A DNA stretch of 64,000 bases, from positions 248,001 to 312,000 of IMG/VR virus record IMGVR_UViG_3300034073_005389. One strand, written 5' to 3'. The notes beneath the pieces are model-generated. The model was not told where the DNA came from. It worked only from the letters and a program-made list of their open reading frames with translations, and did no database searches. The translations under genes and the position numbers were made by a program. Positions 17,096-41,148 of the stretch are shown here, one piece after another. Each line of letters opens with the position of its first letter. The first letter of the stretch is position 1.

Positions 17096-17115
17096 CTACT
17101 CTTTCCTTGTTAGAA

Positions 17116-17313
17116 TTACACTCTTCTAAAGCTTCCTTTAAACTTAGCCGGGGTTTCTTGCTCTTCTTGTTCTTCTAATTGTTTATTACTAATCACATCT
17201 TGTAAATATAAGACAATTTCTTTTGCTTTATCTTCTTCAGAAACAGGTTGTCTTAAAATAGACAAAATTGTATGATAATAATTATTTTTATCTATAATAT
17301 TTATTTTAGTCAA
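17116..17313 (-). CDS. Small hypothetical protein within the cassette
   Basis: 65 aa, overlapping the spoVR stop. Confidence 0.55.
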   Translation of the reverse strand: MTKINIIDKNNYYHTILSILRQPVSEEDKAKEIVLYLQDVISNKQLEEQEEQETPAKFKGSFRRV

Positions 17314-18631: not shown

Positions 18632-18633
18632 AC

Positions 18634-19812
18634 TTACACCTCGGAGCTAACTCCATTTAATATATTCTTAAAAGCAACCCAAACATCTTCTTTTCTTAAG
18701 ATATAAGCTGTATGCAATTTTTTATCTCTTAAGGGTTGCAAAACATCATACAGTGTAGCGGGTTGCTCATAAGCACTGCTAGTAACATCTTTATCTGGAT
18801 TAATTTCGCAATATCCAAACAATTGACATACTTCTTTTAATTCAGATACTTTATCGGCAAATATTTTATTATCAAAACCAAAGTTATCTCCATCGCTACA
18901 TTGAAAAATATAAATATTCCAAGCAGAAGGATGATATCTTTTATCAATAATTTCTTCCACTAATTTAACACCAGAAGAAGCTACTGTTCCACCGTATGTA
19001 CTTTGAGTAAAGAAGTCTTTTTCGTTTACTTCTCTTGCCTCTGCATCATGGGTAACGAAAACAATATCTAATGTTTCGTATTTGCTACGAAGAAACTGAT
19101 ACATCAAAAAGCAAAAGCTTCTAGCTAAGAACTTTTTGTCAGTGCTCATGGAGCCAGAAACATCCATTAAGAAAAAGACAACAGCATTAGTAGAAGGTTC
19201 CTCTTTCTTTTTATAATGCCTGAATTTTAAATCATCTTCATGGAATGGAAAAGTTTCGCCTTCTTCGGCAGTTTCTGGATCGAAACCAGAAGCTTTCATT
19301 CTTTTAATTCTAGCAATAGCAGATTTTTTCTTATCTAATCTAGGAATAATGCCTTCAGAACGATAACCACTACGCTTTAGCTTTTCTTGAGAAATATTGG
19401 ATAGTTGTTTTCGTTGCAACTCTGGAAGATTTAAGTCCTCAAATAAATATTGGGATAATTCATCTAGTGAAATTTCTACTTCGTAAAATTCTTCACCTTT
19501 TTCATTTCCGGCTTTATTACCAGGGGCAGGTTGATCATCATCTGATTGCCCGATTTTTTGACCTTTTTGAAGATCTTTGCCAGGAGCAGACCCTACTTGT
19601 TTAGAAGAGTTAGCACCATAGACAAACTTATATTCTTTAATACCTCTGACAGGTATTTTGAATTTCTTTTTTCCGTTTTCACCAATGATAGATTCTTCAG
19701 CTACAATGTTATGAATTCCGTCTTTAATAGCCTTTTCTATCTTCTGTTTATGACGCCTTCTATCAGAAGCGGAGCGATCTGCTGTGGTTTTATGTTCTCG
19801 GAAAATAGACAT
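18634..19812 (-). CDS. yeaH: YeaH/YhbH (UPF0229) vWA-domain protein
   Basis: DRSASDRRRH start; FFLMDVSGSM MIDAS motif; GGTVASS; WNIYIFQCSDGDN. Start set at the Met of MSIFREH. Confidence 0.93.
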   Translation of the reverse strand: MSIFREHKTTADRSASDRRRHKQKIEKAIKDGIHNIVAEESIIGENGKKKFKIPVRGIKEYKFVYGANSSKQVGSAPGKDLQKGQKIGQSDDDQPAPGNKAGNEKGEEFYEVEISLDELSQYLFEDLNLPELQRKQLSNISQEKLKRSGYRSEGIIPRLDKKKSAIARIKRMKASGFDPETAEEGETFPFHEDDLKFRHYKKKEEPSTNAVVFFLMDVSGSMSTDKKFLARSFCFLMYQFLRSKYETLDIVFVTHDAEAREVNEKDFFTQSTYGGTVASSGVKLVEEIIDKRYHPSAWNIYIFQCSDGDNFGFDNKIFADKVSELKEVCQLFGYCEINPDKDVTSSAYEQPATLYDVLQPLRDKKLHTAYILRKEDVWVAFKNILNGVSSEV

Positions 19813-19918
19813 TTTTAAAAAATACCTGGTTATTAGCATTAATATGCTTTTAATTTTAATTATCGCACGATATCGGCGTATAATGATATATTATATATCA
19901 AAGAAAAGAGAAATTAAA

Positions 19919-21585: not shown

Positions 21586-21885
21586 TTATTGTAAGATATA
21601 CAATTTATAATTCTGCTTTTCTACTCTGTCAAGAACAGATTGTAAGTTTTTAATTGCAGAAGCTAATGTTTTTCCTTTCCCTTCCACTATATTAGAATCA
21701 ATGTCAGGGAAAGGATTAGCTAAATAAGTAACATACTCAGAATTATTTTCCTGGGTTAAAGGAAAAACATACCAATTTTTTTGATATTCATAATATTCAA
21801 TGCTAACTATCACCCAATTCATTGGGTGATAAGTCATTTTCTTAATTTTATTTTGAATATTTATTACTTGTTTAGAGACTTTCAT
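21586..21885 (-). CDS. Hypothetical protein coupled to aceA
   Basis: Start overlaps the aceA stop. Confidence 0.6.
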   Translation of the reverse strand: MKVSKQVINIQNKIKKMTYHPMNWVIVSIEYYEYQKNWYVFPLTQENNSEYVTYLANPFPDIDSNIVEGKGKTLASAIKNLQSVLDRVEKQNYKLYILQ

Positions 21886-23123
21886 TAGAATTGCTCTTGT
21901 TCAGTAGAGCCATGCAAGGCTAATGTAGACGATTTACCAGCAGCAATAACTTGAGATACTGCATCAAAATAACCTGTACCTACTTCTCGCTGGTGTTTAG
22001 TAGCCGTATATCCAACAGCCTCAGCATTAAATTCTGCTTGCTGCAACTCTGAATAAGCAGCCATTCCTCTATCACGGTATTGATTCGCCAATTGATACAT
22101 AGAGTGATTCAATGAATGGAATCCTGCCAAAGTTACAAACTGGAATTTATAACCCATAGCGCCTAATTCACGCTGAAATTTAGCGATAGTTGCATCATCT
22201 AAATTCTTCTTCCAATTAAAAGAAGGAGAGCAATTATAAGCTAGCAACTTTCCAGGAAATTTGGAATGTACAGCTTCTGCAAAAAGTCTAGCCTGTTCTA
22301 GATCTGGTGTAGAAGTCTCCATCCAAATCAAATCAGCATAAGGAGCATAAGCCAATGCCCTAGCTACAGAACGTTCTAGACCTGTACGGCATAAATAGTA
22401 AAAACCTTCAGGGGTTCGACCTTTATTTGCATCAATATAATGCTTATCATAGGGATCAACATCACTAGTGATAAGATTAGCAGAGTCTGCGTCAGTGCGA
22501 GCAATAATAAGAGTAGGAACTCCCATTACATCTGCTGCAAGTCTAGCGGCATTTAAAGTACGAATGAATTGAGAAGTAGGTACTAGAACTTTACCTCCCA
22601 TATGACCACATTTCTTTTCAGAAGCTAATTGATCTTCAAAATGAATACCAGAAGCACCGGCTTCAATCATAGCTTTAGTTAGTTCAAACACATTAAGAGG
22701 TCCACCAAAACCAGCTTCGGCATCAGCTACGATAGGAGCATACCAATCTGTTTTATTTTTACCTTCTGCGGTTTCAATTTGATCGGCTCGTTGTAGTGCG
22801 TTATTGATACGCTTTACAACGGCAGGAACGCTATTAGCTGGGTATAGGCTTTGGTCTGGATACATTTCTCCAGCTAGATTGGCATCAGCGGCAACCTGCC
22901 AACCAGAAAGATAAATAGCTTTTAATCCGGCTTTGACTTGTTGCATGGCTTGATTGCCAGTAAGAGCACCTAAAGCGGCAACATAAGGTTCTTCATGAAG
23001 AAGCTTCCAAAGCTTGTTAGCGCCATCGGTGGCTAATGTGTAAGCAATTTGTTTTGAGCCTCTGAGGCGCACAACATCTTGATATGTATAATTACGAACA
23101 ATTCCTGCAAATCTTTCTTTCAT
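21885..23123 (-). CDS. aceA: Isocitrate lyase
   Basis: [31 protein letters not shown], catalytic [16 protein letters not shown] and KHQREVG. Confidence 0.97.
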
Positions 23124-23135
23124 AAAATCTCCAAT

Positions 23136-23759
23136 TTATTTAAAAACTAATTTTATTTGTTTTTTATTAACTATCTTAATAAATTCTTCTTGAGAAGAAG
23201 CTTTAATTTCTTGATTAAAGTAATAAAATTTTTTAATTTTAATAGAACCATCTTCTAAATATTCGATATGTGCGGCATCATCTTCTCGGTGAAGCAATTC
23301 GTGACTATACCATTGCTCTTCCATTCTTAAGCCATTTGAATAATATTTAATATATGCTGGTCCATTTTCTCTATGATAACACCTTGAATGAGGAGGGCTT
23401 GTGCCTGATTTCCAATATTCTTCATATTTAGTACCATCATCATTATAATAAGTAGTGACCGCCCCGCCATCTTTTCTATAATATTTGTTATGTTGCCACC
23501 ACTCTTCTATTTTAATATTTTTGTTTTCAGAATATTGTATTTTAGCTGGACCATCTTCACGATGAAGTTGACCATTTATATAATAACCTTCATATTCAAG
23601 ATCACCATTATCAAAATATGATATATGTGCAGGTCCATCTTCCCGGTGGAGTCGGCATTTATTATACCAAAACTCATCTATTTTATTTAGAAATTTAAAA
23701 TAAATTTCTTTTTTAAGATTATTGGGAGAGTAATAAATAATCTTATTAGTCTTAGACAT
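23136..23759 (-). CDS. MORN-variant (LHREDGPA) repeat protein, YwqK-like
   Basis: About five (L)HRExGPA...Y.x.NG repeats. Confidence 0.8.
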   Translation of the reverse strand: MSKTNKIIYYSPNNLKKEIYFKFLNKIDEFWYNKCRLHREDGPAHISYFDNGDLEYEGYYINGQLHREDGPAKIQYSENKNIKIEEWWQHNKYYRKDGGAVTTYYNDDGTKYEEYWKSGTSPPHSRCYHRENGPAYIKYYSNGLRMEEQWYSHELLHREDDAAHIEYLEDGSIKIKKFYYFNQEIKASSQEEFIKIVNKKQIKLVFK

Positions 23760-29310: not shown

Positions 29311-29907
29311 TCATATTCTATATTTTTTCTCTATTTTAGAAGCTACTTTTATTAGTTTTTGAACTGAATCAATTAATGAAGCCTGAGCGGCAGGTTTGGC
29401 TTCTCCCCTACCACTTAGAGCTTGTTGCTGACCAGCATCTGGTGCTGGGGCTTTTACACTTGATAATGCAAGATTGGCAGAAGATGATATCTCATTTAAT
29501 GCTTCTTTTACTTTGTTTAAGTAATTTGCACTATTATTTAATGTTGCATCTTTATTTTCAGGATTCATCTCCTGAACAATGCCCAATAAATCCATTAATG
29601 GTTTTGCTACACTCATATCTACAGATTTATTCATAATATAAGGAGCAACGCTAGTATATGCAAAATGTTTTGCTGGAGCAGTTAATTGTCCATCTTGAAC
29701 TAACTTATAATAAGCCTCTGCATTGCTCTTTAATTTATTAACAGCATCGATAATTTCTGCATCTTTTCCATTATCCTGAGGAGCTAATCTGCGACGAGCA
29801 TTTAACATATTAGTGGCAACTATTGGTTTAACCAAATTAATTAATTTTGCAGCTGCTGCTTCAACTTGTTTCATTGCCATAATTGGATTCATTGGAAGTG
29901 TTGCCAT
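29311..29907 (-). CDS. Hypothetical Ala-rich helical protein
   Basis: 198 aa; C-terminal LIKVASKIEKKY resembles the shared leader motif. Confidence 0.6.
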   Translation of the reverse strand: MATLPMNPIMAMKQVEAAAAKLINLVKPIVATNMLNARRRLAPQDNGKDAEIIDAVNKLKSNAEAYYKLVQDGQLTAPAKHFAYTSVAPYIMNKSVDMSVAKPLMDLLGIVQEMNPENKDATLNNSANYLNKVKEALNEISSSANLALSSVKAPAPDAGQQQALSGRGEAKPAAQASLIDSVQKLIKVASKIEKKYRI

Positions 29908-29980
29908 AATTATTCCTTTATATTAAAACTTTAATATAATAATATTATATTACTATGTAATATAACTTTAAAGGACTTGT

Positions 29981-30574
29981 ATGAACGATATTGATCCTAT
30001 TAACTATTTATTTGTAATAGCAGAATATGTAGAAGAAAAATATACTAAGACTGGCGATCAGCTAGTTGTTACTGCTGCTAAAAAGAAAAAACCATCAGGC
30101 ATTGCCACCAAAACAAATCCAGCCCTATGGAGTCGCTGCAAGAGCGAAGCCAAGTCTAGAATGGGAGGTAAGCATTCCGCCAGAGCTATGCAACTAGCTG
30201 TCAAATTATATAAACAACGTGGCGGTGGATTTAGAGGTGGTAAACCAACTGCCAAAACAAATAAAATGAAAAAATGGACCAAACAAAAATGGATGTATCT
30301 TTCTGACTTTAAAAAGAAAAAAAAAGACAGAAATAAACTAGATGACAATAATGTCGATGATTATGCTGATGAATATACTAATTACATCAATGATGATATT
30401 GGATACATAGACGATAATGATATCGGAAGATATCTACCAGAAGATAAATGGGAATCACTATCACCTGGCGAAAGAGAAGCCACAGATAAAAAAAAGAGAA
30501 AAGAAGGTAAAAATAAGCAATATGTTCCCAATACAGAAAAAGCAAAAGTAAAATCTAAAAGAAAATATTACTGA
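29981..30574 (+). CDS. Basic hypothetical phage protein
   Basis: TNPALWSRCK...HSARAMQLAVKLYKQRGGGFRG and GRYLPEDKWESLSPGEREATDKKKR segments. Confidence 0.65.
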   Translation: MNDIDPINYLFVIAEYVEEKYTKTGDQLVVTAAKKKKPSGIATKTNPALWSRCKSEAKSRMGGKHSARAMQLAVKLYKQRGGGFRGGKPTAKTNKMKKWTKQKWMYLSDFKKKKKDRNKLDDNNVDDYADEYTNYINDDIGYIDDNDIGRYLPEDKWESLSPGEREATDKKKRKEGKNKQYVPNTEKAKVKSKRKYY

Positions 30575-31096
30575 TTATTTTTTATTAGCCAATTCGTAAT
30601 TATTATATCTATCATCATCTGTTACCTCCTTAACTACTTTTAAGTAAGGAGGTATTTTTACTTTATCTTTTTTATTCTCTAATTCAACTTCTAATAATGC
30701 TAATCCTGCTAAATCATTTTTAAAAACATCTAATTCAAATACATGATCTTCATGTTTAAATAAAAATCTAATTTTCTCTACTGACTTTTTATCAGGATGA
30801 CATTTTTTTACTAATTTATTATATTCTTCTTTAGATATTTCTTTTTCTTCTTCTTTATTTGTACTTGGATCTGAAGTTTTATATTTTTTATTGTAATGAT
30901 AAACTGTTTCTGTATCTCCAGCCAAACCCTCTACTGTTTTTCTAACTCTTGGAGATATTCCGTCTTTGTCTGGTTCAAGATAAAACTGAACAATTCTTTT
31001 TACATCTATTAAATGATCAAATAGTTTACCTAAATCCGACCAAGATTTAGGTAATTTAATAACAAATTTTCTTTCAATTTCTAATTTTTTACCCAT
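30575..31096 (-). CDS. CYTH-domain protein
   Basis: LEIERKF (ExExK), FELDVF, LLEVEL and EVTDDDRYNN. Confidence 0.88.
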   Translation of the reverse strand: MGKKLEIERKFVIKLPKSWSDLGKLFDHLIDVKRIVQFYLEPDKDGISPRVRKTVEGLAGDTETVYHYNKKYKTSDPSTNKEEEKEISKEEYNKLVKKCHPDKKSVEKIRFLFKHEDHVFELDVFKNDLAGLALLEVELENKKDKVKIPPYLKVVKEVTDDDRYNNYELANKK

Positions 31097-31101
31097 AATT
31101 A

Positions 31102-31740
31102 CTAATCCAAGTTAATATAAACTACTATAGTATTTTCTGATGAAGCAAAAGAATACAAAGAAGAACTTGGCTCCCATTCTTCTCCAGCAGCAAAAGCCAT
31201 TATTTCCATAAAGTCTAAAGGCTCATCCCACTCCAAAGAAGCTTTTTTCTTTCTTGGGTCTTCCATGCCCTCATATTTTCTTTTATAGTATTCGCTATCA
31301 ATGGCTTTTTGAGCATCAAATTTGTCTATTAACTTTAATTGAATTCTTCGACTATATTTACCCGCACAAGATCTAGAACAAAAGGGACCACTTTTGTTCT
31401 TTTTAGCTTTATCACGAATTAATCTAGGAGACCTTTCAAATTCTTTATCACACCATGCACAGTTAAATTTAACCATTTTTACACGGCGAGTATCATTGGC
31501 ACTATGCTCTTTACGAGGAACTAGTCTTAAATTACTAATATCATTGTTATCAAAATTAGAATCCCAGTGGTCCACTGTTTCTTTGTCAGGGTGTAATTTC
31601 CTGCCAAGATGAAGTTCCATAACCCATTTAGGGTATGAAACAGTGCGGCGTTTACCTTTACGGTCCACCACAATAACTATTTTTCTATTATCTTGTCTAG
31701 TATAGGGTCCCCATACTTTAAACTTATCTGCATATGCCAT
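31102..31740 (-). CDS. HNH endonuclease with zinc finger
   Basis: VMELHLGRKL...VDHWDSNFDNNDISNL; CAWC...FCSRSC. Confidence 0.82.
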   Translation of the reverse strand: MAYADKFKVWGPYTRQDNRKIVIVVDRKGKRRTVSYPKWVMELHLGRKLHPDKETVDHWDSNFDNNDISNLRLVPRKEHSANDTRRVKMVKFNCAWCDKEFERSPRLIRDKAKKNKSGPFCSRSCAGKYSRRIQLKLIDKFDAQKAIDSEYYKRKYEGMEDPRKKKASLEWDEPLDFMEIMAFAAGEEWEPSSSLYSFASSENTIVVYINLD

Positions 31741-31824
31741 GCTTTATATAATAAAATATTCGTAATTAAACTATCTTATCTTTTATAAAGATCACCAATT
31801 ACACCTTTATATTTCCTACTATAA

Positions 31825-32235
31825 TCAACCTATTTGGGCGAAAGCATGTCGTATTTTTCCTGACTTGCTAACAAAGACATTGCCACGACAAACGTCTCCG
31901 TCATCTATAGAAAGATTATAAAATACGAATTGTATTAGTGAAGTGTTAGTTTCACAATCTAATATACTATGTAATTCCCAATTTTCTGGCTTACTAGCCT
32001 CTTGTTGTAAAAAGCTAGACATTTGCTCTGGAGTTTCTAGTAATTTACTATAATCTCCATTTGGAGCGATGTTAGCCACTTCTTGGCACACCTTTTCGGA
32101 ATTGTATTTTAAATAATTAGATAATGACTCTTTTAAATCATTAATAAAAATATTTAATTTTTCTTTAACTTTAGCATCAATAACTTCAATGGTATCATTC
32201 GGCTGTAAATTTAATTCTTCAATTGAATTGATCAT
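31825..32235 (-). CDS. Hypothetical protein
   Basis: 136-aa ORF. Confidence 0.6.
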   Translation of the reverse strand: MINSIEELNLQPNDTIEVIDAKVKEKLNIFINDLKESLSNYLKYNSEKVCQEVANIAPNGDYSKLLETPEQMSSFLQQEASKPENWELHSILDCETNTSLIQFVFYNLSIDDGDVCRGNVFVSKSGKIRHAFAQIG

Positions 32236-32298
32236 AATTATTCCTTTATATAAATTACTACTAATTAGATATGTATATGTCTAATCTTTTGGTGATTT

Positions 32299-33396
32299 AT
32301 GTCAAACGAAAAAACAAAAAATATAACAATACAACAAATAGATAAGTTAGCAACTATTTTAGAATCTAATTCTTTTAGAATAAAAAAAGAAGCTGGTAAA
32401 TATCAGGGACTAGCTAAATTATTTCAAAAAAGCTTTACACAAGCGCTTGGAGGAGCTACAGATGATGCGGCAAAAGCGGCGGCAACAAATGCCGCAAAAA
32501 ATGCTGTAAGAGCTAAAATAACTAATGATCCTGCTTTACTGGCTAGAATACAAGCCAGCACTGGGTTTACTAGTATAGACGATTTTATAGATCAAGCTGC
32601 TAAAAAAGGAATGAAAAAAATAAAATTGCCAGGACCCCCAACGCCCAATAGTCGTATACCGCCAGACCTTCAGCAATATTTAAAGTATGATGATGCTGCA
32701 AAAAAATATGTAACCACTGGTGTGCCTCCTGCAGCAGAAAGAAGAGCTATTCAAAAACAAATTTCTACTTTTATTGCAGGACAAAATAAATTAAATGCAG
32801 ATGCTGCTAAAGCAGCCGCAAAAGCTGCCAGAGACTTAGCAAAATTTCAAGCAGGTATTGATGCCGCTGTAGAGGGCATGGGTTTTACCGCTAAAGCCAG
32901 AAAAGGGGCAATAGCTTTAGGCTCATTATCTGTACTATACTTCATGCTAACAGGCAAATCTGCAAGCAGTGAAGATCCAAATAGTCAAAAAGTTATTAAA
33001 AAAGTAATGGAAAATGCAGGCTCTATGACTGATAATAGTATCAAACTTCCAAATCTAACTAATAAAATAAGCAGCTTTACTTCATCTCTTAATTCATTAA
33101 ATGTATCAGAAGAAAAGAAAACACGCTTATCAGGCTATATAGATAAATTATCTTCTATCCAAAAAGCATTAGAAAAATGCGGCGAGCCTTTATCTGATAA
33201 AAATGCAAATACTTTTACAGAAAATTTAAAAACAGCTGAAAATGAAATTAATTCATATTTAGGAAAACATGATAATTTAATTGCGTTCTTAACCAAGAAT
33301 TCAGATTTAGGTCCAGCAGCAGAAGGAATTAAACAAGATTTAATAAATTACCTAGGCGCAGTTGAAGAAACCCGCAAAAATATGGGGAAAGCATAA
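32299..33396 (+). CDS. Ala-rich helical protein with a hydrophobic segment (possible virion/internal protein)
   Basis: 365 aa; IALGSLSVLYFMLTG segment; leader ending IKKEA. Confidence 0.65.
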   Translation: MSNEKTKNITIQQIDKLATILESNSFRIKKEAGKYQGLAKLFQKSFTQALGGATDDAAKAAATNAAKNAVRAKITNDPALLARIQASTGFTSIDDFIDQAAKKGMKKIKLPGPPTPNSRIPPDLQQYLKYDDAAKKYVTTGVPPAAERRAIQKQISTFIAGQNKLNADAAKAAAKAARDLAKFQAGIDAAVEGMGFTAKARKGAIALGSLSVLYFMLTGKSASSEDPNSQKVIKKVMENAGSMTDNSIKLPNLTNKISSFTSSLNSLNVSEEKKTRLSGYIDKLSSIQKALEKCGEPLSDKNANTFTENLKTAENEINSYLGKHDNLIAFLTKNSDLGPAAEGIKQDLINYLGAVEETRKNMGKA

Positions 33397-34112
33397 TGAA
33401 CAGCAAGCAAATTAAAAATATTTTAAAGCTGGCAGATAAATATTATCAATACTCCTCTTATGCTTACAAGAGCGCCAGTATTATGAAAGCTTTACAATTT
33501 GGAAGTAAAGGGGCTATGATTATCAGCCCACTAATAGAATTGGCGATGGGTATAGTAAAAGATAATAGCGAAATTTTAAAAGTTTCTAATTCATTATATG
33601 AATCACTTAATACATATAAAAGCTCATATGGTTTTGGTAAACATGAAGATTTTTTATCAAATTATATGACAAAACTTGGAGATTTTAAATCATCTTTCGC
33701 AGAAGCGAATAATATAAAAGAAAATGATCCAGAAAATTCTTTAGCAGTTTTAAAAAAAATTATTGATAATGGAGAATTTTTAGTTCTTAACACAAAGAAA
33801 GTTATAGATTCTATCAGAAGCATGAAATCAGTTGGAGGTCAAGCTTTTGATTTATTAAAAGAATTATCTCTAAGCTTTGGGGCAGAAACTGCCACAACTA
33901 ATATTATTGAACAAGCAGGAAACTTATCTATGCTATTAGATGCTGAATTCCCCAATATCGAAGCAAAATATCAGGAACTAATGAACGCAATTGAAACTCA
34001 CTCGGCAAGTGAGGCTGGAGGGAATGCCAATGGTCCTGCCGCAGAACCCACTACAGAAACTGCTACTCCTGAAGAAAGTATTTTATCACAATTAGAAGGT
34101 ATATCTTTATAA
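33396..34112 (+). CDS. Hypothetical protein, tandem paralog A
   Basis: Shares YKxSYGFGxHxDFLSxY, SMKSVGG and ILSQLxGISL with 34122..34877. Confidence 0.75.
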   Translation: MNSKQIKNILKLADKYYQYSSYAYKSASIMKALQFGSKGAMIISPLIELAMGIVKDNSEILKVSNSLYESLNTYKSSYGFGKHEDFLSNYMTKLGDFKSSFAEANNIKENDPENSLAVLKKIIDNGEFLVLNTKKVIDSIRSMKSVGGQAFDLLKELSLSFGAETATTNIIEQAGNLSMLLDAEFPNIEAKYQELMNAIETHSASEAGGNANGPAAEPTTETATPEESILSQLEGISL

Positions 34113-34121
34113 GAGATTTTT

Positions 34122-34877
34122 ATGAATAAAAAAGATATAAATTATATAGTAAAGCTATCTAACAAATATGAAAGATATACTTATCAATTAGAAAGTCGTG
34201 CAATTGCGCCTGCTGCGGCTGCAGCAGGCGTGCTAGGTCCCATATTAACAGCCATGACCGTTGGAGCAATAGTCAATGGAATTGTCAATTATTTAAAAAA
34301 TAGCCCTGAGCTAATAGACAATGCTAAATTACTATATAATACGTTATTAGACTATAAAAAATCATATGGCTTTGGTGAACATGATGATTTTCTTTCTAAG
34401 TATACTGAAAACTTAGAAAAGTTTATCACAGCATATAATAGCGTAAATAACAATCCAGATAGAAAAGATAAAAGTCTTTTAGATGATTTTGAATCAATTA
34501 TTAAAAATGGTAGTGAGATTCAGGCTAAGTCTGAAAAAGTAATAGAAGCAATTGAAAGCATGAAATCTGTTGGAGGCTCTATTTTTAGTGCCTTAAAAAC
34601 CGTATCACTTAATTTTGGGTTTGAAACAGATACATCCACTATCTTAGATCAGGCTACCAATGTAGCAGTATTGGTTGGCAAATATCTTCCAGAAATTAAA
34701 TTAAGACATAAAAAATTAATGGAAGAAATCCAAGCGCAAATTATTAATAATCAATCAACCCCTGAATCTGAAATACCTGCTGAAACTCCTACCGAAACTC
34801 CTACAGCAGAAAAACCATCTCCAGAAACTAGAAAAGAAGAAGATATCTTATCACAATTAGGCGGTATATCTTTATAA
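34122..34877 (+). CDS. Hypothetical protein, tandem paralog B
   Basis: Same shared motifs as paralog A. Confidence 0.75.
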   Translation: MNKKDINYIVKLSNKYERYTYQLESRAIAPAAAAAGVLGPILTAMTVGAIVNGIVNYLKNSPELIDNAKLLYNTLLDYKKSYGFGEHDDFLSKYTENLEKFITAYNSVNNNPDRKDKSLLDDFESIIKNGSEIQAKSEKVIEAIESMKSVGGSIFSALKTVSLNFGFETDTSTILDQATNVAVLVGKYLPEIKLRHKKLMEEIQAQIINNQSTPESEIPAETPTETPTAEKPSPETRKEEDILSQLGGISL

Positions 34878-34880
34878 GAT

Positions 34881-35702
34881 ATGACCTCTATATTGAAAAA
34901 TAATGAAAATAAAATTTTAAAATTATATCAAGATGGATATGGTACAACCTATATCGCTAATTTAATTGGCGTTAAATATCCATCTATTAGAAAATTCTTA
35001 CAAAGAAAGAATATAAAAATAAGATCTAAAGCCGATGCAGCCATTCTTTCTTGCGACAGACGTAAAAAGTATTTATTTAATAAAAATTTTTTTACTACTC
35101 CCAGTTGGCAACTAGCCTACTTTGCCGGATTTTGTTTAGCTGATGGCAGCTTATATATTACTAAAAACACTTCTAGACTCACTATTTCTATTCATCAAGA
35201 TGATAAGAATATCTTAGAACACTTCTGTCAATGGATGCAATATCCCTTACAAGGAATTGTTCCAGGTACTAATAATAAAATGGCTTTACGAGTTTCAGAT
35301 CCTGTTTTAGTAAATAATTTAAAGCCATATGGAATCGTTCCTAACAAAACTTATCAACCTAATTTAAAGTTAAATATTCCTAATCAATATATTAAACCAT
35401 TTTTAATTGGATTTATTGATGGAGATGGTACTTTAAAATATAATTTAAAAACAGGCTATAGATTTGGGATAGTAGGAAACAAAATAACAATTGACAATAT
35501 TGTAAATCTATTACAGCAAATAGGCTTTAATAAAGATTTTGTAATTGCAGATGATCCTGTAGATAAAGTTTGGAAACGAGTTTGTTTGTATCGTAAACAG
35601 GATATTTGCGATTTAGTATCTTTATTAGAGCCTAATAAATATTTTTATTTAAAAAGAAAGTGGCAGAATTACTTAGACTTTTTGTCAGCGGCATCCATTT
35701 GA
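34881..35702 (+). CDS. Free-standing LAGLIDADG endonuclease with N-terminal HTH
   Basis: AYFAGFCLADGS and PFLIGFIDGDGT motifs; 3' end overlaps the convergent ORF 35669..36355. Confidence 0.88.
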   Translation: MTSILKNNENKILKLYQDGYGTTYIANLIGVKYPSIRKFLQRKNIKIRSKADAAILSCDRRKKYLFNKNFFTTPSWQLAYFAGFCLADGSLYITKNTSRLTISIHQDDKNILEHFCQWMQYPLQGIVPGTNNKMALRVSDPVLVNNLKPYGIVPNKTYQPNLKLNIPNQYIKPFLIGFIDGDGTLKYNLKTGYRFGIVGNKITIDNIVNLLQQIGFNKDFVIADDPVDKVWKRVCLYRKQDICDLVSLLEPNKYFYLKRKWQNYLDFLSAASI

Positions 35703-36355
35703 CGGCATACTTTATTTGCCCAAGCTCTACCAGGATCGCCACCCCAAAGTAGCCAAGCCACGTATCCTTTGTCTTGGCTCAATGGTTTACCACCACTTGC
35801 ACCTTTATTTTTCTCATGACGATCAAAGAAGGCTTTCATTCTACGAACAGTAGAAGGGCTTAAGGTTTTTCTATTTTTTAGTGAAACTGCTCTAGCTACA
35901 CCAGAACCAATTCCTTGCTTATGAGCTTGTTGTACATTAAGCCCGCCTTTGCCTTTGTTTTTCTTACGTAATTCTAAGCCACGAGCAGCGGCAGAAGCAG
36001 CAGATTCTGAAGGCTTGAAGTCAATATGATCATATTTTCCAGCAGCTAGTTTGATCATATCTTGATGATCAATCTCTGCTTCTGCTACTTTCTCAGAACG
36101 AACATATCCCAAAATTTTAGTTACGTTCATTTTGGCAATAGCTAAAGATTCATCTGCCCATTGTGGTAAATCATCTTTTGCATTCATAATTGAAAGCAAT
36201 TCAGAAGCATCTGTAATGATATTTTTTAAATTAGCATATGCCATGTAAGAAACAGGTCTAACGCCTTCATGCTCTTCTACAACAACATCAGGGTCTACAT
36301 CTACTAATTTTTTTTCAAATTTTTGAGCTATTTTTAATAATTTATCGACATTCAT
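35669..36355 (-). CDS. Two-domain phage protein, probable head-associated
   Basis: SYMAY...DDLPQW domain plus RGLELR...RAVSL...LSPSTVRRMKAFFDRH...AWLLWGGD, a domain I recall from phage head/prohead proteins. Confidence 0.6.
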   Translation of the reverse strand: MNVDKLLKIAQKFEKKLVDVDPDVVVEEHEGVRPVSYMAYANLKNIITDASELLSIMNAKDDLPQWADESLAIAKMNVTKILGYVRSEKVAEAEIDHQDMIKLAAGKYDHIDFKPSESAASAAARGLELRKKNKGKGGLNVQQAHKQGIGSGVARAVSLKNRKTLSPSTVRRMKAFFDRHEKNKGASGGKPLSQDKGYVAWLLWGGDPGRAWANKVCRQMDAADKKSK

Positions 36356-36377
36356 GATTTACATAGCATTTTATGCA

Positions 36378-37016
36378 CTATAGCTTTTCAAAAATTTGCT
36401 CAATCATTTTACATCTTTTTTCAACAACTTCCCAATTAATATCTTCCCATGATAATCTGACATACTCTTTTTTATCGGATAAATGATCTTTCCAGTAAGC
36501 ATGCTCCCACATATCAACAACTAATAAAGGAATAAAGCCGATAGGGCAATTATCATGATGACTTTCTATTGCGGCAATAGAGGTTTTCTTGTCATATAAA
36601 GAATATCCCCAAACAGCCCAACCACTAACTGGAACAAAGGCAGTGCTAATAAAATTATCTTCAAAATTATTTAATGTTTTAAAATCTTTTTTAATTAATT
36701 GCAAAGTACATTTACCAGGAGAAGATTTGCCTCCTAGATTTCCAAAATACAACTCATGTAAATAGGCTCCGTTAGCTGCCCAAGTAATACGTCTTTTTAT
36801 TTGAGCAAATTGAGAATTAGGAATATCATCTTTGATTTTAGAAAAATTTGTTTTATCTAAAACAGACACCATTTTATTATAATTTTTTACATAATTATGA
36901 TAAAGAGTATCTCTGTGAGCCTCTAACACTTCATTAGAAATAGAGTCTAATTCATTTTCTAATGGAAATTTTTTAGGTTTTAAATCTTGAGCTAATGCTA
37001 TAAATCTTTTATTCAT
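36378..37016 (-). CDS. sod: Fe/Mn superoxide dismutase
   Basis: Ligand motifs AHRDTLYHNYV, NGAYLHELYF and DMWEHAY. Confidence 0.88.
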   Translation of the reverse strand: MNKRFIALAQDLKPKKFPLENELDSISNEVLEAHRDTLYHNYVKNYNKMVSVLDKTNFSKIKDDIPNSQFAQIKRRITWAANGAYLHELYFGNLGGKSSPGKCTLQLIKKDFKTLNNFEDNFISTAFVPVSGWAVWGYSLYDKKTSIAAIESHHDNCPIGFIPLLVVDMWEHAYWKDHLSDKKEYVRLSWEDINWEVVEKRCKMIEQIFEKL

Positions 37017-37041
37017 AAAAGAATATAAAAATATTACAATA

Positions 37042-37206
37042 TTAATCTCTTAATACGAAACAATATCCTCCGCACATACATTCTAACAAAAATTTATCTT
37101 CATTTACGTCTTCAATATCTTTTTCTTCTTCAAATTCTGTTTGAAGAATAGCTTCACATTTTTCACATCTAAAAATAAATTTTCTTTTTTTATCGTTAAA
37201 AAACAT
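37042..37206 (-). CDS. Small zinc-ribbon protein (54 aa, not in the ORF track)
   Basis: MFFNDKKRKFIFRCEKC...ECMCGG read directly from the sequence. Confidence 0.55.
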   Translation of the reverse strand: MFFNDKKRKFIFRCEKCEAILQTEFEEEKDIEDVNEDKFLLECMCGGYCFVLRD

Positions 37207-37232
37207 ACTTATATATTGTTTTATGATACAAA

Positions 37233-38111
37233 CTATATACAGTACGGAGAAAAATAAATTCTTTCTCTATGGCTATTTTCTTTACCTCTTTTGTTACCTA
37301 GATTGGCTAATCCGCCATTAGCTTTCCAAGCAACTACTTTCCAAGTATCGGGAAAAAAATAATCATTCTCATATCCGCAAACCGCAATTCTTAATCTTGG
37401 ATTATCTCCTTGAGAGATAGCCCATTTACAAACATCATGGTATAAATTAGATTCTTCTGAATATACTTTATCCCTGTTATTGGTAGAGTAAGGAGGGTCT
37501 AAAAATACTGCAGTAATATCTTTTTCTCCTATACCTTTACTTTTATTTAAAATAGATGGAGATAAAACTTTAGACCAATCTCCGCAACATATTCTTACTC
37601 TTCTTATTCTTTTCTGTAAAGATTGCATCCAATCTAAGATTGGATATGTCATTCCATGAACTCCTCCACCGGCTGAGGATAATAAAGGCATAGCTTTTAA
37701 GCCTTTTGGTTGGAGCCAATTATTTCCGATAGAGGCAGAAATGCCCCAAACCCACCATCCGGCAATTTTTGCATCATAAAATGATGCATCATCATCCATC
37801 TTTTTTCTAAATTCATCATTAATTTGTGATATAATCCATTTATGTCTAGCATGCAAATCAGCTTCTGTAACTGGATAATCCGCATATTTAGCAACTTGTT
37901 CGGCATCAGCACTAACTGCTCTCCAAAAATTAACAATAAGACAATCTTTATCATTAACGGTTTCTATTTTAGAGGGAGAGGGATTGGCTAATAATACTGC
38001 TAAAGAGCCAGCAAAAGGCTCGACATAATTAGAAATGTTCCCAAATTTAGACCAAATAAGATTAGCTACTTTGCTTTTACCTCCAAAATAAGGAAAAGGT
38101 GATTTTAACAT
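37233..38111 (-). CDS. DNA adenine methyltransferase (D12/Dam-like)
   Basis: PFPYFGGKS, YVEPFAGS and FLDPPY. Confidence 0.9.
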   Translation of the reverse strand: MLKSPFPYFGGKSKVANLIWSKFGNISNYVEPFAGSLAVLLANPSPSKIETVNDKDCLIVNFWRAVSADAEQVAKYADYPVTEADLHARHKWIISQINDEFRKKMDDDASFYDAKIAGWWVWGISASIGNNWLQPKGLKAMPLLSSAGGGVHGMTYPILDWMQSLQKRIRRVRICCGDWSKVLSPSILNKSKGIGEKDITAVFLDPPYSTNNRDKVYSEESNLYHDVCKWAISQGDNPRLRIAVCGYENDYFFPDTWKVVAWKANGGLANLGNKRGKENSHRERIYFSPYCI

Positions 38112-38178
38112 AGTTAATTACTTATACCCACTAATAAAAAAATATATAATTTATCTAATTATAGATAAGAGAGAACTT

Positions 38179-40692
38179 ATGATTCTAAATAATTTATTAA
38201 AAGCTGCTGATTTATATTTTAATCAAACACATAATTTTTTATCTTTAGCAGAAGAAGATGATGATGATGATGATGATCTTCTAAAGACAATTAAAAGTAA
38301 TAGAGAATTAAATAAATTATTTAATGATGCTGGAAGTTATTTAAAAATTATAACAGATACAAGTCTTGTTGCTAATATAATGAAGTGTTTTGTTGCTGCA
38401 GCGAAAGCTGTAACAGCAAAAGCTGGATATGAAACTGTTATTGATTTAATCAAAACAGCTCTTATTGATTTAGATGCAGAATTTTCAAATGATCCTAAAT
38501 ATGCTCAATCAAATGCAGCAGCAGAAGAAATAGAAGGAATTTTAATAGACCTTAAAATCTATCTGGAAAACCTTCCAAAAGAAGATAAAAATCCAGCAAA
38601 AGAAAAAGAAATAAAAGAATTTATTTATTCTAAATTAAACATAGGATTGTTAAATGTAGCTAAACAAGTTTCACAAGAATTTGCACAACAAGAATCTAGA
38701 CCAGAAAGTGGGGAAGGCGGCGAAGAAGCTCCTAGTGAATTTGAAAATAAATTAGAAATGGCACAAGACCCCGCAGAAAGAAGCTATAGCGTTTTCAATA
38801 AAAGAGAGTATTTTCAGTGGTCTGATTTGATAGATAAAGAAATTAAAAATTATGAAAATATTATAAAAATATTTGATCCGTCTACTGAACCATTACCAGT
38901 TCAGAGAGTCAGAACCCTTATTGACTTATTAAGAAAAATTTTTAAATTATCTAAGGATATGGAACACCTTCAAGATAAAGTTAATACGTATGATACTAAT
39001 AGCACGGATCCAGCAGTAGTAAAAGAAAGAGAAGATTTAAAATCTAAACAACAAGAGTTATTAACTCTAGTAAAAGAAAGAAGAAAAGAAAAAGCAACTG
39101 TAAGAAGATATTTGGCTGATAAGTCTAATAGTATTTTAGAAAAAGAATTGTTTTATTTAAACAGCAATCCTAATCTTGATAAGAATGAAAGAGGTGATTC
39201 TCAGTTTAGAAAACTAATTTTAAAATTAAAGATTGATTTAAATAAATCTTTATCTAGCAGAGATTATGGAAAAACAAAAACCAACAAAGAAAGAGCTGGT
39301 CTCTTAACCGCGCTAGAGCAAGAAAACCAAAGAAATACAATTAACAATCAAAGATTCGTAACACAATCAGTTCAAAATATTATTAAGCCAAGACAGAAAG
39401 TTATTGACGATCTTTCTAAGAAAATTACTTCAATAGAAGAAGTTACTCGTAACCTAACAGAGTTTCGTGATAAAGTAAATCGGGGCGAATTTGGTCCTAT
39501 AGCACAAAAAATATGGACTATTTTAAAGAGAATAGCTAATAATAAAAGTGATGATGTCACTAAGAAAGTAACAAAATTTTTTTTGTACGGCAAACTTATA
39601 CCAGAGGTAAGAAAAGGGGCAAATAATTCAACTTACTATCAAAATAATAAAGAGTCAATAGATAGATTAATCTCTCTTATCAATCAAGCAACCGCTTTAA
39701 GATCACAAAGCAATTATAAATCTAATCCATTATATATTAGCATAATATCACAAATAAAAAATCAAAAAAATATTGTATATAGTGCTATAAGAGAAAATTT
39801 GCAGCAAGAATATAATAATTTAAATTCTCAACAAAAAGCAACTAAAGAGTATGAGGCTACTTATGGTCCTATAAGGAGATATCTAAATAACTTTTACACA
39901 GAAAGTAGTGAGGGTGATAGAGGACAGTATTTCTATCATTTAAAACGTGATGATGGTGATAATTATTTCTTTTATGTAAATGATGATACCGATAAATCAA
40001 ATATTGAAAATATAATTAATAAATTAAAAGAAATAGATTTATTAAATAAATCTGCAGAAAGTGATGAAAAGATTTTTGCACCTACAAATAGGTATGATTA
40101 CGAATCCATGTTTACAGAGCTAGTTGATGAACTATCATCTGCTATAAACAGAACGAAAAGTTTTGCAGAAATAGAAGAAAATTTAAAAAAGAACATGGAC
40201 TCTCTTAACTCTTCCAGATTTGAAATAGATGAAGAGACTGGCGCTGAAGAAGAAGTATCTGATATATATGTATCTAAAGGAAGAGATAATAAATACAATG
40301 TAACAATTATCAATCCTCCTGACGACACGGGAGAAAGAACAGCTTTATTAGAAAGCATAAAAGAAAAAATTATAAACCATAATAAAGAAATAGATGATCT
40401 TTCTGGTCAAAGATGGTTATCTAGTAGAAATAGAGACAAATTATCTTCTTATAGAATAAACACACAAATTAATATAGCAGGACAAAAACCAGTACAAGCC
40501 ACTGAAGATAAAGATGTTCCTGCAGGACAGCCCGCCGCACCAAAAGCGGCTCCCCCAACAGCTGCTCCAAAACCAGCAAAACCAGCAAAACCAGCTGCTA
40601 CAAAACCAGAAACTGCTACAAAACCAGCTGTGACTCAAGAATATATTAATAATTTGATGGATGAAACATTAAAAAGATTCCTTGGAAAATAA
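38179..40692 (+). CDS. Large helical hypothetical protein with Pro/Ala-rich tail
   Basis: 837-aa ORF; acidic run after the leader; PAKPAKPA tail. Confidence 0.75.
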   Translation: MILNNLLKAADLYFNQTHNFLSLAEEDDDDDDDLLKTIKSNRELNKLFNDAGSYLKIITDTSLVANIMKCFVAAAKAVTAKAGYETVIDLIKTALIDLDAEFSNDPKYAQSNAAAEEIEGILIDLKIYLENLPKEDKNPAKEKEIKEFIYSKLNIGLLNVAKQVSQEFAQQESRPESGEGGEEAPSEFENKLEMAQDPAERSYSVFNKREYFQWSDLIDKEIKNYENIIKIFDPSTEPLPVQRVRTLIDLLRKIFKLSKDMEHLQDKVNTYDTNSTDPAVVKEREDLKSKQQELLTLVKERRKEKATVRRYLADKSNSILEKELFYLNSNPNLDKNERGDSQFRKLILKLKIDLNKSLSSRDYGKTKTNKERAGLLTALEQENQRNTINNQRFVTQSVQNIIKPRQKVIDDLSKKITSIEEVTRNLTEFRDKVNRGEFGPIAQKIWTILKRIANNKSDDVTKKVTKFFLYGKLIPEVRKGANNSTYYQNNKESIDRLISLINQATALRSQSNYKSNPLYISIISQIKNQKNIVYSAIRENLQQEYNNLNSQQKATKEYEATYGPIRRYLNNFYTESSEGDRGQYFYHLKRDDGDNYFFYVNDDTDKSNIENIINKLKEIDLLNKSAESDEKIFAPTNRYDYESMFTELVDELSSAINRTKSFAEIEENLKKNMDSLNSSRFEIDEETGAEEEVSDIYVSKGRDNKYNVTIINPPDDTGERTALLESIKEKIINHNKEIDDLSGQRWLSSRNRDKLSSYRINTQINIAGQKPVQATEDKDVPAGQPAAPKAAPPTAAPKPAKPAKPAATKPETATKPAVTQEYINNLMDETLKRFLGK

Positions 40693-40695
40693 AAA

Positions 40696-41148
40696 ATGAA
40701 TATCAATAAAAGAAAAAATATTTTAAAAAAAATGTCTTTCCTAGATGAGGAAAACAAGTATCTAGCAAAAAATCCTGCTTTAGAAGCAGGAGAAGATCTA
40801 CCTGCAGAAAAATCTTCTGCTCAAGAAGATATTCCTAATACAAATCTTCCAGATCCTATAACTCCAGCATCAGCGTTAGAAGAAATAGAAATTGTTGAAC
40901 CTACAACAACAGGAACTACTAGTTATGAGCCAGATATGACTAGTATTAGCCCAGATCAAATGAGTATAATAAATGAAATATTTTTTCAAGCAATAAATGA
41001 TTTTACCAATGAAAAAATAATGTCTCAAGAATTTGATCCAGAAATTGCCGAATCAGCACTACAAGAAATAAAAAGTATACTTACTCAAGGAGAACAATCA
41101 AAATTTTTAGCAGCTGCTAACAAAAAAACTAATACTTTAAAGAAGTAA
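40696..41148 (+). CDS. Acidic hypothetical protein
   Basis: 150 aa, coupled to the upstream gene. Confidence 0.65.
   Translation: MNINKRKNILKKMSFLDEENKYLAKNPALEAGEDLPAEKSSAQEDIPNTNLPDPITPASALEEIEIVEPTTTGTTSYEPDMTSISPDQMSIINEIFFQAINDFTNEKIMSQEFDPEIAESALQEIKSILTQGEQSKFLAAANKKTNTLKK

What the first reader, a model, noticed from the sequence alone, without database searches (positions are those of the whole stretch)
29311..41148. Shared N-terminal leader on unrelated unknown proteins: candidate capsid-targeting/cleavage signal
Seen: ILKLADKYY (33396), IVKLSNKYE (34122), LLKIAQKFE (35669), LLKAADLYF (38179), IDKLATILE (32299), LFVIAEYVE (29981), and a C-terminal LIKVASKIE (29311). Several are followed within about 15 aa by a small-residue site ending in Ala (IKKEA, YKSA, ESRA, LSLA, VVTA), after which the proteins diverge. 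Known: T4 internal proteins use a short N-terminal capsid-targeting sequence removed by the prohead protease. Inference: an analogous, undescribed packaging code for ejected cargo in this phage group. None of these genes has a TTGACA promoter, consistent with late expression.
Basis: partly seen in the sequence, partly recalled or inferred. Interest (0 to 1): 0.6.

Follow-up and report, generated by a model that had tools for sequence, protein, structure and literature searches.

The report
Shared N-terminal tag on phage proteins
Many otherwise unrelated proteins of an uncultivated 361-kb phage and its relatives start with the same short helical tag; it is real and specific to this phage group, and it most likely loads proteins into the assembling virus head, which is inferred and not shown.

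Summary
The window lies in a 361,490-bp IMG/VR jumbo phage whose capsid protein is 53% identical to that of Bacillus phage G. A short amphipathic motif, h-h-K-h-A-(Q/N/D)-x-(F/Y), occurs 51 times in its proteome. Sixteen of these lie in the first 20 residues (4.4 expected; composition-preserving shuffles give about 3). The bias recurs in eight related contigs: 59 N-terminal hits in 2,487 proteins, against 7 in 1,207 in unrelated phages. One relative has six proteins with a near-identical 19-residue leader, no homology in the rest of the protein, and synonymous codon differences.

Two are weak. The C-terminal case and the "Ala cleavage site" are not supported.

Function is inferred. The tag is enriched in the portal-to-capsid gene module. 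It resembles the capsid protein's own N-terminal extension. One tagged protein carries a domain that small phages fuse directly to their prohead protease and capsid protein. A homolog of the phage G gene annotated as head maturation protease is present.

The best reading is a capsid-targeting leader like that of T4 internal proteins (confidence about 0.4). Packaging, cleavage and the receptor remain untested.

The parts
33396..34112 (+). 238-aa protein with no wider relatives. The leader is roughly residues 1-27, with the core motif at 33420-33446. Paralog of the next gene.
   Evidence: No relatives in IMG/VR or in four jumbo relatives.
34122..34877 (+). 251-aa paralog with the same leader (motif 34146-34172). 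An Ala/Gly-rich hydrophobic stretch follows at residues 27-45.
   Evidence: Only variants of 95% identity or more were found among 5.8 billion proteins.
35669..36355 (-). 228-aa protein. Leader helix at residues 3-18 (motif 36314-36340), a disordered linker, a middle helical part, then a widespread phage domain at residues ~107-228 (35672-36037).
   Evidence: Orthologs keep the leader in G001 and G002; G003 lacks exactly the leader; G004 and G005 join a leader directly to the domain. In cultured phages the domain is fused to protease plus capsid protein.
38179..40692 (+). 837-aa acidic protein with the leader (motif 38194-38220), followed by a run of Asp.
   Evidence: Weak homologs in G006, G007 and G008 keep an N-terminal leader of the same type.
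32299..33396 (+). 365-aa protein with a weak, motif-like N-terminus (32338-32364). It resembles the capsid protein's N-terminal helix more than the core pattern.
   Evidence: It fails the strict pattern and has no clear homologs.
29981..30574 (+). 197-aa basic protein, a weak motif-like case (30008-30034).
   Evidence: Its G004 homolog has a different N-terminus that ends in the same A-x-x-h-x-x-K-Y pattern. Matches phrog_14910 and phrog_17747, both of unknown function.
29311..29907 (-). 198-aa Ala-rich helical protein with the motif near its C-terminus (29329-29355). Its membership is unsupported.
   Evidence: C-terminal enrichment is not significant. No homologs found.
34881..35702 (+). LAGLIDADG homing endonuclease inside the cluster. 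It is not a carrier.

Best explanation
The tag is an N-terminal amphipathic helix of about 12-20 residues. It starts 1-18 residues from the initiator Met and is usually followed by a flexible linker. I propose that it works as a capsid-targeting (prohead-loading) sequence.

The proposed mechanism is this. During head assembly the helix docks onto a component of the prohead interior: either the scaffold/protease core or the capsid protein's own N-terminal extension, which carries a similar helix. Conserved head-module proteins and a fast-changing set of accessory 'cargo' proteins would then be enclosed together and later delivered with the DNA. The window cluster 32299-40692 belongs to that accessory set. 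The prohead protease may remove the tag.

Shown here: the tag exists, is restricted to N-termini, is specific to this clade, is modular, and acts at the protein level.

Inferred: it docks in the prohead, the carriers are packaged, and the tag is cleaved.
For: 1. Modularity. Six G004 proteins carry a near-identical 19-residue leader. Five were compared and have no body homology. Their upstream DNA is not conserved, and the leader codons differ at synonymous sites.
2. The leader of the 228-aa protein models as helix 3-18 followed by a linker with pLDDT below 50.
3. Rosetta-stone argument. The C-terminal domain of that protein lies at the N-terminus of a 974-aa Roseobacter phage CRP-822 protein that also contains Peptidase_S78 and Phage_capsid. 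It also lies at the N-terminus of a 661-aa coiled-coil protein encoded between the head-morphogenesis and capsid genes of a Vibrio phage. In this clade the domain stands alone but carries a leader in five of six genomes.
4. In the module from capsid gene to portal gene, 5 of 28 ORFs are carriers, against 11 of 453 elsewhere (p=0.0013; p=0.026 with paralogs collapsed).
5. Leaders are conserved across orthologs in G006-G008, including a syntenic, fast-evolving head-module gene.
6. The 337-aa capsid protein has a ~44-residue N-terminal extension that phage G lacks. It contains a similar helix followed by a linker.
7. A homolog of phage G gp19, annotated as head maturation protease, is present (E=1e-22 to 2e-28).
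8. The window carriers are unique accessory genes. This matches the diverse T-even internal proteins, which share only a capsid-targeting sequence (PMC3012670; P1 DarB, PMC9024508).
Against: - No carrier is known to be a virion protein, and this clade has no cultured member.
- The window carriers lie in a non-structural region next to superoxide dismutase, a DNA methylase, PrkA/SpoVR and isocitrate lyase genes.
- They lack the ATATAAG element that is enriched upstream of structural genes.
- Some carriers are enzymes, which need not be packaged: a nucleotidyltransferase in G004 and an HNH endonuclease homolog with a motif-like N-terminal extension in G001.
- Virus Rctr197k keeps the capsid-protein helix but shows no leader enrichment. 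Phage G lacks the extension yet has its own, different leader. The link to the capsid extension is therefore not general.
- No cleavage site could be defined.
Confidence: 0.4

Rival explanations
1. The tag is a docking peptide for some other common partner, not the capsid. The partner could be a phage or host hub such as a chaperone, a protease adaptor, the replication or transcription machinery, or a subcellular site. The tag would then recruit or time many phage proteins.
For: Eleven of the 16 strict carriers in G000 lie outside the head module, several of them among auxiliary genes. Carriers include a nucleotidyltransferase and an HNH endonuclease homolog. The phage encodes proteins whose N-termini look, by eye only, like trigger factor and a J-domain protein. 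The candidate late-promoter element is absent upstream of the window carriers.
Against: This does not explain the enrichment in the portal-to-capsid module. It does not explain the similar helix on the capsid protein itself. It does not explain why a domain fused to protease plus capsid protein in other phages carries the tag here.
Confidence: 0.25
2. There is no shared function. These are ordinary N-terminal amphipathic helices that look alike because of paralogy, AT-rich codon bias and selection by eye.
For: Two of the four strong cases are paralogs. Overall N-terminal 9-mer similarity equals that of internal segments. G001, G003, G005 and G008 show no significant enrichment on their own. 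The pattern was defined after seeing the data.
Against: Composition-preserving shuffles never reach the observed counts in G000 or G004. Unrelated phages show no N-terminal excess (7 observed against 6.3 in shuffles) and no hits to the longer pattern. G004 has six near-identical leaders; the five compared have non-homologous bodies. Leaders are retained in orthologs whose bodies have diverged beyond detection.
Confidence: 0.15
3. The tag is a membrane-targeting amphipathic helix or signal-anchor, and the cluster encodes membrane proteins involved in, for example, lysis or superinfection exclusion.
For: The 34122 protein has an Ala/Gly-rich hydrophobic stretch just after the leader. One carrier, genome 337911-338528, has a weak peptidoglycan-binding match below the Pfam cut-off.
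Against: Only 2 of 18 carriers and related proteins examined have any TM-like segment, and both are marginal. The leader has no hydrophobic core and no signal-peptide layout. Head-module proteins and the capsid protein carry it.
Confidence: 0.07
4. The conservation acts on the mRNA, as a translation-initiation or 5' coding-region element, and not on the peptide.
For: The feature is strictly confined to the first ~25 codons, and the leaders are A-rich.
Against: Identical leader residues are written with different codons (Ser TCA or AGC; Ala GCA, GCT, GCG or GCC; Val GTT or GTA), and the upstream DNA is unrelated.
Confidence: 0.03

Closest known systems
T4 capsid targeting sequence of internal proteins IPI-III and Alt
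   Same: A short N-terminal peptide is shared by otherwise unrelated, highly variable accessory proteins and directs them into the scaffolding core (PMC3012670). It is removed by the prohead protease (my knowledge).
   Different: This phage has no T4-type protease or capsid protein (PF03420 and PF07068 absent, though neither family matched any control genome either). Here the tag is longer, is also found on conserved head-module proteins, and resembles the capsid protein's own N-terminus. Packaging and cleavage are untested here.
P1 DarB N-terminal packaging signal
   Same: The N-terminal 30 residues suffice to send a reporter into the capsid (PMC9024508).
   Different: In P1 no consensus is shared among the Dar proteins (same paper). 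Here a clear consensus is shared.
Coat-binding terminal helices of scaffolding proteins (P22 gp8; 80alpha gp46 and SaPI1 CpmB) and the HK97 protease targeting tail
   Same: A short amphipathic terminal helix on unrelated proteins binds the interior or N-arm of an HK97-fold shell (my knowledge). Here the helical, scaffold-like proteins encoded next to the capsid gene carry the tag.
   Different: The known helices are C-terminal and are limited to one or two proteins per phage. Here the tag is N-terminal and is carried by a dozen or more proteins.
Encapsulin cargo-loading peptides
   Same: Terminal peptides load diverse enzymes into an HK97-fold shell (my knowledge).
   Different: The consensus is different and usually C-terminal, and the system is not a virus. 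Binding to the shell could not be assessed here.
phiKZ/SPN3US head-protein propeptides
   Same: These are jumbo phages in which many head and ejection proteins are processed by a prohead protease (PMC5694885, PMC10052503, listed).
   Different: They are defined by a cleavage motif and not by a shared targeting helix. The lineage is unrelated.

Membership tests
T4-type capsid targeting sequence system | A short N-terminal peptide shared by otherwise non-homologous proteins | tested here: met
T4-type capsid targeting sequence system | Carriers are present inside proheads or virions | not testable with these tools
   The clade is uncultivated and no proteome exists. There is only indirect support.
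T4-type capsid targeting sequence system | The prohead protease removes the leader at a defined site | tested here: inconclusive
A homolog of the phage G gene annotated as head maturation protease is present.
T4-type capsid targeting sequence system | T4-like gp21 protease and gp23 capsid protein | tested here: not met
   PF03420 and PF07068 gave no match, but neither family matched any control genome either, so the search is weak. The capsid protein belongs to phrog_2522 and is related to that of phage G.
Sec/Tat signal peptide or signal-anchor | A positively charged n-region, a hydrophobic core of 10-15 residues, then a small-x-small cleavage site | tested here: not met
   The leader is amphipathic, with Lys, Asn and Asp throughout. 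Only 34122 has a hydrophobic stretch, and it follows the leader.
Scaffold-type coat-binding helix | A terminal amphipathic helix on scaffold proteins encoded next to the capsid gene | tested here: met
   The families of genome ORFs 107490 and 112642 are helical, lie beside the capsid gene and have conserved tagged N-termini. That they are scaffolds is inferred.
Scaffold-type coat-binding helix | Direct binding to the capsid protein | tested here: inconclusive
   The complex prediction scored 0.00, which the tool reports as no answer. The capsid model itself was poor, with pLDDT 41.
Encapsulin cargo-loading peptide | The canonical Gly/Ser/Leu-rich, usually C-terminal consensus | tested here: not met
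   The motif is different and N-terminal. The encapsulin consensus is from my knowledge.
One paralogous gene family | Homology extends beyond the leader | tested here: not met
   This holds only for 33396/34122 and for the 127711 family. The other carriers have no body homology at E<=1e-3.

The most novel reading that the evidence does not exclude
A globally abundant, uncultivated clade of jumbo phages related to phage G uses a sequence-defined N-terminal 'zip code'. The capsid protein's own N-terminal extension, the scaffold-like head proteins and a rapidly changing repertoire of cargo proteins would all share it. The cargo would include enzymes such as a CCA-adding-type nucleotidyltransferase. 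Sister lineages would use different codes: phage G has its own N-terminal M-K-R-L-I-K-K tag on 8 proteins, among them three that share an H-G-T motif (which I read, by eye only, as ADP-ribosyltransferase-like). If so, the packaged and injected proteome could be read directly from metagenomic sequence.
Probability: 0.3. Interest if true: 0.8.

Novelty: new variant of a known kind. Interest (0 to 1): 0.6.

Why it matters
Which proteins a phage injects together with its DNA is known for only a handful of cultured phages, and it cannot be predicted from sequence. Those proteins include anti-defence factors, polymerases and modifying enzymes.

If this tag is a capsid-loading signal, the cargo of hundreds of uncultivated jumbo phages could be listed by a motif scan. 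It would also give a compact handle for loading foreign proteins into very large capsids. The cultured relative, phage G, has an analogous tag of its own, so the idea can be tested at the bench now.

Tried and rejected
I then derived the seeds from the ORF files by pattern.
- EM refinement of the motif on internal control segments drifted to other motifs, so its site counts are not comparable. The refined matrix is overfitted to G000.
- A leader-only profile scores at most 30 bits. That is too weak for a search of 1.8 billion proteins, so the big search was not run.
- An exact degenerate DNA pattern for the G004 leader found only G004.
- The search for related loci found no relatives of the 33396 or 38179 proteins.
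- The complex prediction of capsid protein plus leader residues 1-45 gave no answer (score 0.00). This is not evidence either way.
- The capsid protein model was poor because the alignment is shallow, at 86-98% identity.
- Foldseek against the PDB and the ESM Atlas gave nothing for the 228-aa protein or for genome ORF 107490.
- The sigma-70 scan was uninformative.
- The candidate late element ATATAAG is enriched upstream of structural genes but absent upstream of the window carriers, and it is uncorrected for multiple testing.
- A test across lineages, asking whether a capsid N-terminal extension goes with leader enrichment, gave no correlation. Rctr197k keeps the helix without enrichment, and Tunturi_5 has neither.
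- The supplementary tables of the phage G proteomics paper are not held.
- The G000 capsid gene is split by an intervening sequence.
Full report
**What the window is.** The window is bases 248,001-312,000 of a single 361,490-bp IMG/VR virus record (33% G+C, CheckV completeness 97%). My ORF call gives 481 ORFs, of which 428 are on the minus strand. No cultured phage is close at the DNA level. The terminase is only about 25% identical to those of Bacillus phages.

The capsid protein belongs to phrog_2522. In this genome it is split into a 108-aa and a 239-aa piece by an intervening sequence that holds an ORF with a helix-turn-helix-like N-terminus (by eye). In two relatives it is an intact 337-aa protein. 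It is 86-99% identical in the 120 best of more than 1,700 metagenome proteins found, on contigs up to 480 kb. Its nearest cultured relative is the capsid protein of Bacillus phage G, at 53% identity.

Homology to phage G also identifies the portal (genome 140963-143971) and a counterpart of phage G gp19. A published study calls gp19 a head maturation protease. Here it forms the N-terminal part of a ~1,220-aa protein.

**The observation.** The seven strings are present at the stated ORFs. None of the proteins matches Pfam with significance. The only PHROG matches are to families of unknown function.

It occurs 51 times in the proteome, 16 of them in the first 20 residues (4.4 expected, p=3e-6). 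Motif starts cluster at residues 1-18. Shuffling residues 2-25 of every protein gives 3.1 matches on average against 15 observed (0 of 2000 shuffles reach it). Composition therefore does not explain the excess.

They include a 408-aa protein encoded next to the capsid gene, a 245-aa head-module protein, and a family of four large paralogs beside the portal gene. Others lie at genome 209165, 245474, 322133 and 337911.

**Replication in relatives.** I fetched eight related contigs whole: G001-G005 through the 228-aa protein, and G006-G008 through the capsid protein.
- Across the nine genomes there are 59 N-terminal hits in 2,487 proteins, against 7 in 1,207 in unrelated phage loci (p=5e-5).
- In the unrelated set the count equals the shuffle expectation.
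- A stricter pattern that adds F/Y three residues after the Ala gives 22 against 0 (p=3e-4). Of its 39 matches in the clade, 22 lie in the first 28 residues.
- Taken singly, G000, G002, G004, G006 and G007 are significant. G001, G003, G005 and G008 are not.

**The tag is modular and acts at the protein level.** G004 has six proteins that begin with a near-identical 19-residue leader. The five I compared have no detectable homology to one another after the leader. One of the six is a PolyA_pol-type nucleotidyltransferase. Their upstream DNA is unrelated, and the same leader residues are written with different codons.

The 228-aa window protein shows the same modularity across genomes:
- its orthologs in G001 and G002 keep a leader;
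- the G003 ortholog lacks exactly the leader;
- G004 and G005 join a leader directly to the C-terminal domain;
- another G004 protein reuses the leader and middle part with a different C-terminus.

AlphaFold models the leader as helix 3-18 followed by a low-confidence linker. The C-terminal domain is modelled with confidence.

**What does not hold.**
- 33396 and 34122 are paralogs, so they count as one case.
- 32299 and 29981 fail the strict pattern.
- The C-terminal occurrence in 29311-29907 has no statistical support.
- The 'Ala site' is not conserved beyond the two paralogs.
- The promoter argument is uninformative in this AT-rich DNA.
- Membrane targeting is unlikely, because the carriers are mostly soluble by hydropathy.

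**Link to the head.** Five observations point the same way.
1. In the stretch from capsid gene to portal gene, 5 of 28 ORFs are carriers, against 11 of 453 elsewhere (p=0.0013; p=0.026 with paralogs collapsed).
2. These head-module carriers keep their leaders in G006-G008. So does a syntenic gene whose body has diverged beyond recognition.
3. The capsid protein has a ~44-residue N-terminal extension that phage G lacks. It contains a similar helix followed by a linker. The leader of 32299 resembles it most closely.
4. The conserved domain of the 228-aa protein lies at the N-terminus of a 974-aa protein of Roseobacter phage CRP-822. That protein also holds a prohead protease domain and the capsid domain. 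The domain also lies at the N-terminus of a coiled-coil protein encoded between the head-morphogenesis and capsid genes of a Vibrio phage. In small phages this domain therefore enters the prohead by covalent fusion. Here it stands alone and carries the tag.
5. In G002 and G003 the ortholog of the 228-aa protein lies inside the tail gene module.

**Comparison with known systems.** The best parallel is the T4 capsid targeting sequence. The T-even internal proteins are a diverse set that shares only that sequence (PMC3012670). P1 DarB also has an N-terminal packaging signal (PMC9024508). The window carriers fit this picture as accessory genes. The 33396, 34122 and 38179 proteins have no relatives in IMG/VR. 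The 33396 protein has none in four jumbo relatives. The 34122 protein has only near-identical copies among 5.8 billion proteins. This phage is not T4-like, so the tag is an analogue and not a member of that system.

**Weak points.**
- Nothing shows packaging or cleavage.
- The window cluster lies among auxiliary genes: superoxide dismutase, a Dam-type methylase, a flap endonuclease, PrkA/SpoVR/DUF444 and isocitrate lyase.
- It lacks the ATATAAG element that is enriched upstream of structural genes.
- The complex prediction gave no answer.
- More distant relatives do not support a general link between a capsid extension and leader enrichment.

**A lead from phage G.** Phage G does not have the clade's motif. 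It does have its own N-terminal tag, M-[KR]-[KR]-L-[IVL]-[KSR]-K. Eight of its nine occurrences are N-terminal (0.2 expected from shuffles). Three of these proteins share an H-G-T motif after the tag, which I read, by eye only, as ADP-ribosyltransferase-like. Published particle proteomics of phage G detect many non-structural proteins (PMC12484599). This makes the hypothesis testable in a cultured phage.

**Verdict.** The tag is a real, clade-specific, modular N-terminal peptide. A capsid-loading role is the best-supported reading (about 0.4) but rests on inference. I rate it a new variant of a known kind, with interest 0.6.

Noticed in passing
window ~55404 (-); genome 303-361 kb: There are 43 copies of a promoter-like repeat with the core ACCCATCGGTCAAC, most followed about 17 nt later by a TA-rich, -10-like box. 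All are on the minus strand. Most lie 40-130 nt upstream of small genes and are packed at the right end of the genome. This is probably the early promoter set.
   Followed up: partly
genome 103146-105388 (outside the window): The major capsid gene is split into 108-aa and 239-aa pieces around an ORF with a helix-turn-helix-like N-terminus (by eye). The same split occurs in G006, while G007 and G008 have an intact 337-aa gene.
   Followed up: partly
genome 140963-143971 (outside the window): The portal protein is 1,002 aa, against 627 aa in G007. The ~420-aa insertion contains a LAGLIDADG domain, so it is probably an intein. The protein carrying the homolog of phage G's annotated head maturation protease (genome 118554-123302) is also about 360 aa longer than its orthologs.
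   Followed up: partly
G007 215039-218707 and orthologs: The homolog of phage G gp19 (annotated as head maturation protease) forms the N-terminal ~250 residues of a ~1,220-aa protein. The remaining ~1,000 residues have no match and may be a scaffold.
   Followed up: no
L128-L207; P0001-P0120: The capsid protein is 86-99% identical in the 120 best of more than 1,700 metagenome proteins found, on contigs of up to 480 kb. Flanking and accessory genes differ widely between the same genomes, so the shell is under unusually strong constraint.
   Followed up: no
Bacillus phage G, NC_023719 (L266-L290): Phage G has its own N-terminal tag, M-[KR]-[KR]-L-[IVL]-[KSR]-K. Eight of nine occurrences are N-terminal. 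It sits on unrelated small proteins (gp13, gp38) and on three proteins that share an H-G-T motif, which I read by eye as ADP-ribosyltransferase-like.
   Followed up: partly
window 15164-19839 (-): A complete PrkA kinase, SpoVR and DUF444 (YeaH-like) gene trio is encoded by the phage. This is a bacterial stress and sporulation-associated module.
   Followed up: partly
window 21885-23123 (-) and 36378-37016 (-): The phage encodes isocitrate lyase and Fe/Mn superoxide dismutase as auxiliary metabolic genes.
   Followed up: partly
L017 5500-20400 (G001): An array of about 20 tandem small paralogs, which I read by eye as MORN-repeat-like, surrounds the ortholog of the 228-aa protein. G000 has related genes at window 23136-23759 and genome 340491-340919.
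   Followed up: no
genome 10-160 kb: ATATAAG is found upstream of 8 of 50 structural-region genes, twice before the capsid gene, against 1 of 141 elsewhere. It is a candidate late promoter element, uncorrected for multiple testing.
   Followed up: partly
window 36038-36055 (-), residues 101-106 of the 228-aa protein: A second copy of the h-h-K-h-A-x-x-K-Y pattern lies at the N-terminal edge of the widespread C-terminal domain. It is conserved in many unrelated phages in which that domain begins the protein. The leader may have arisen from this edge.
   Followed up: no
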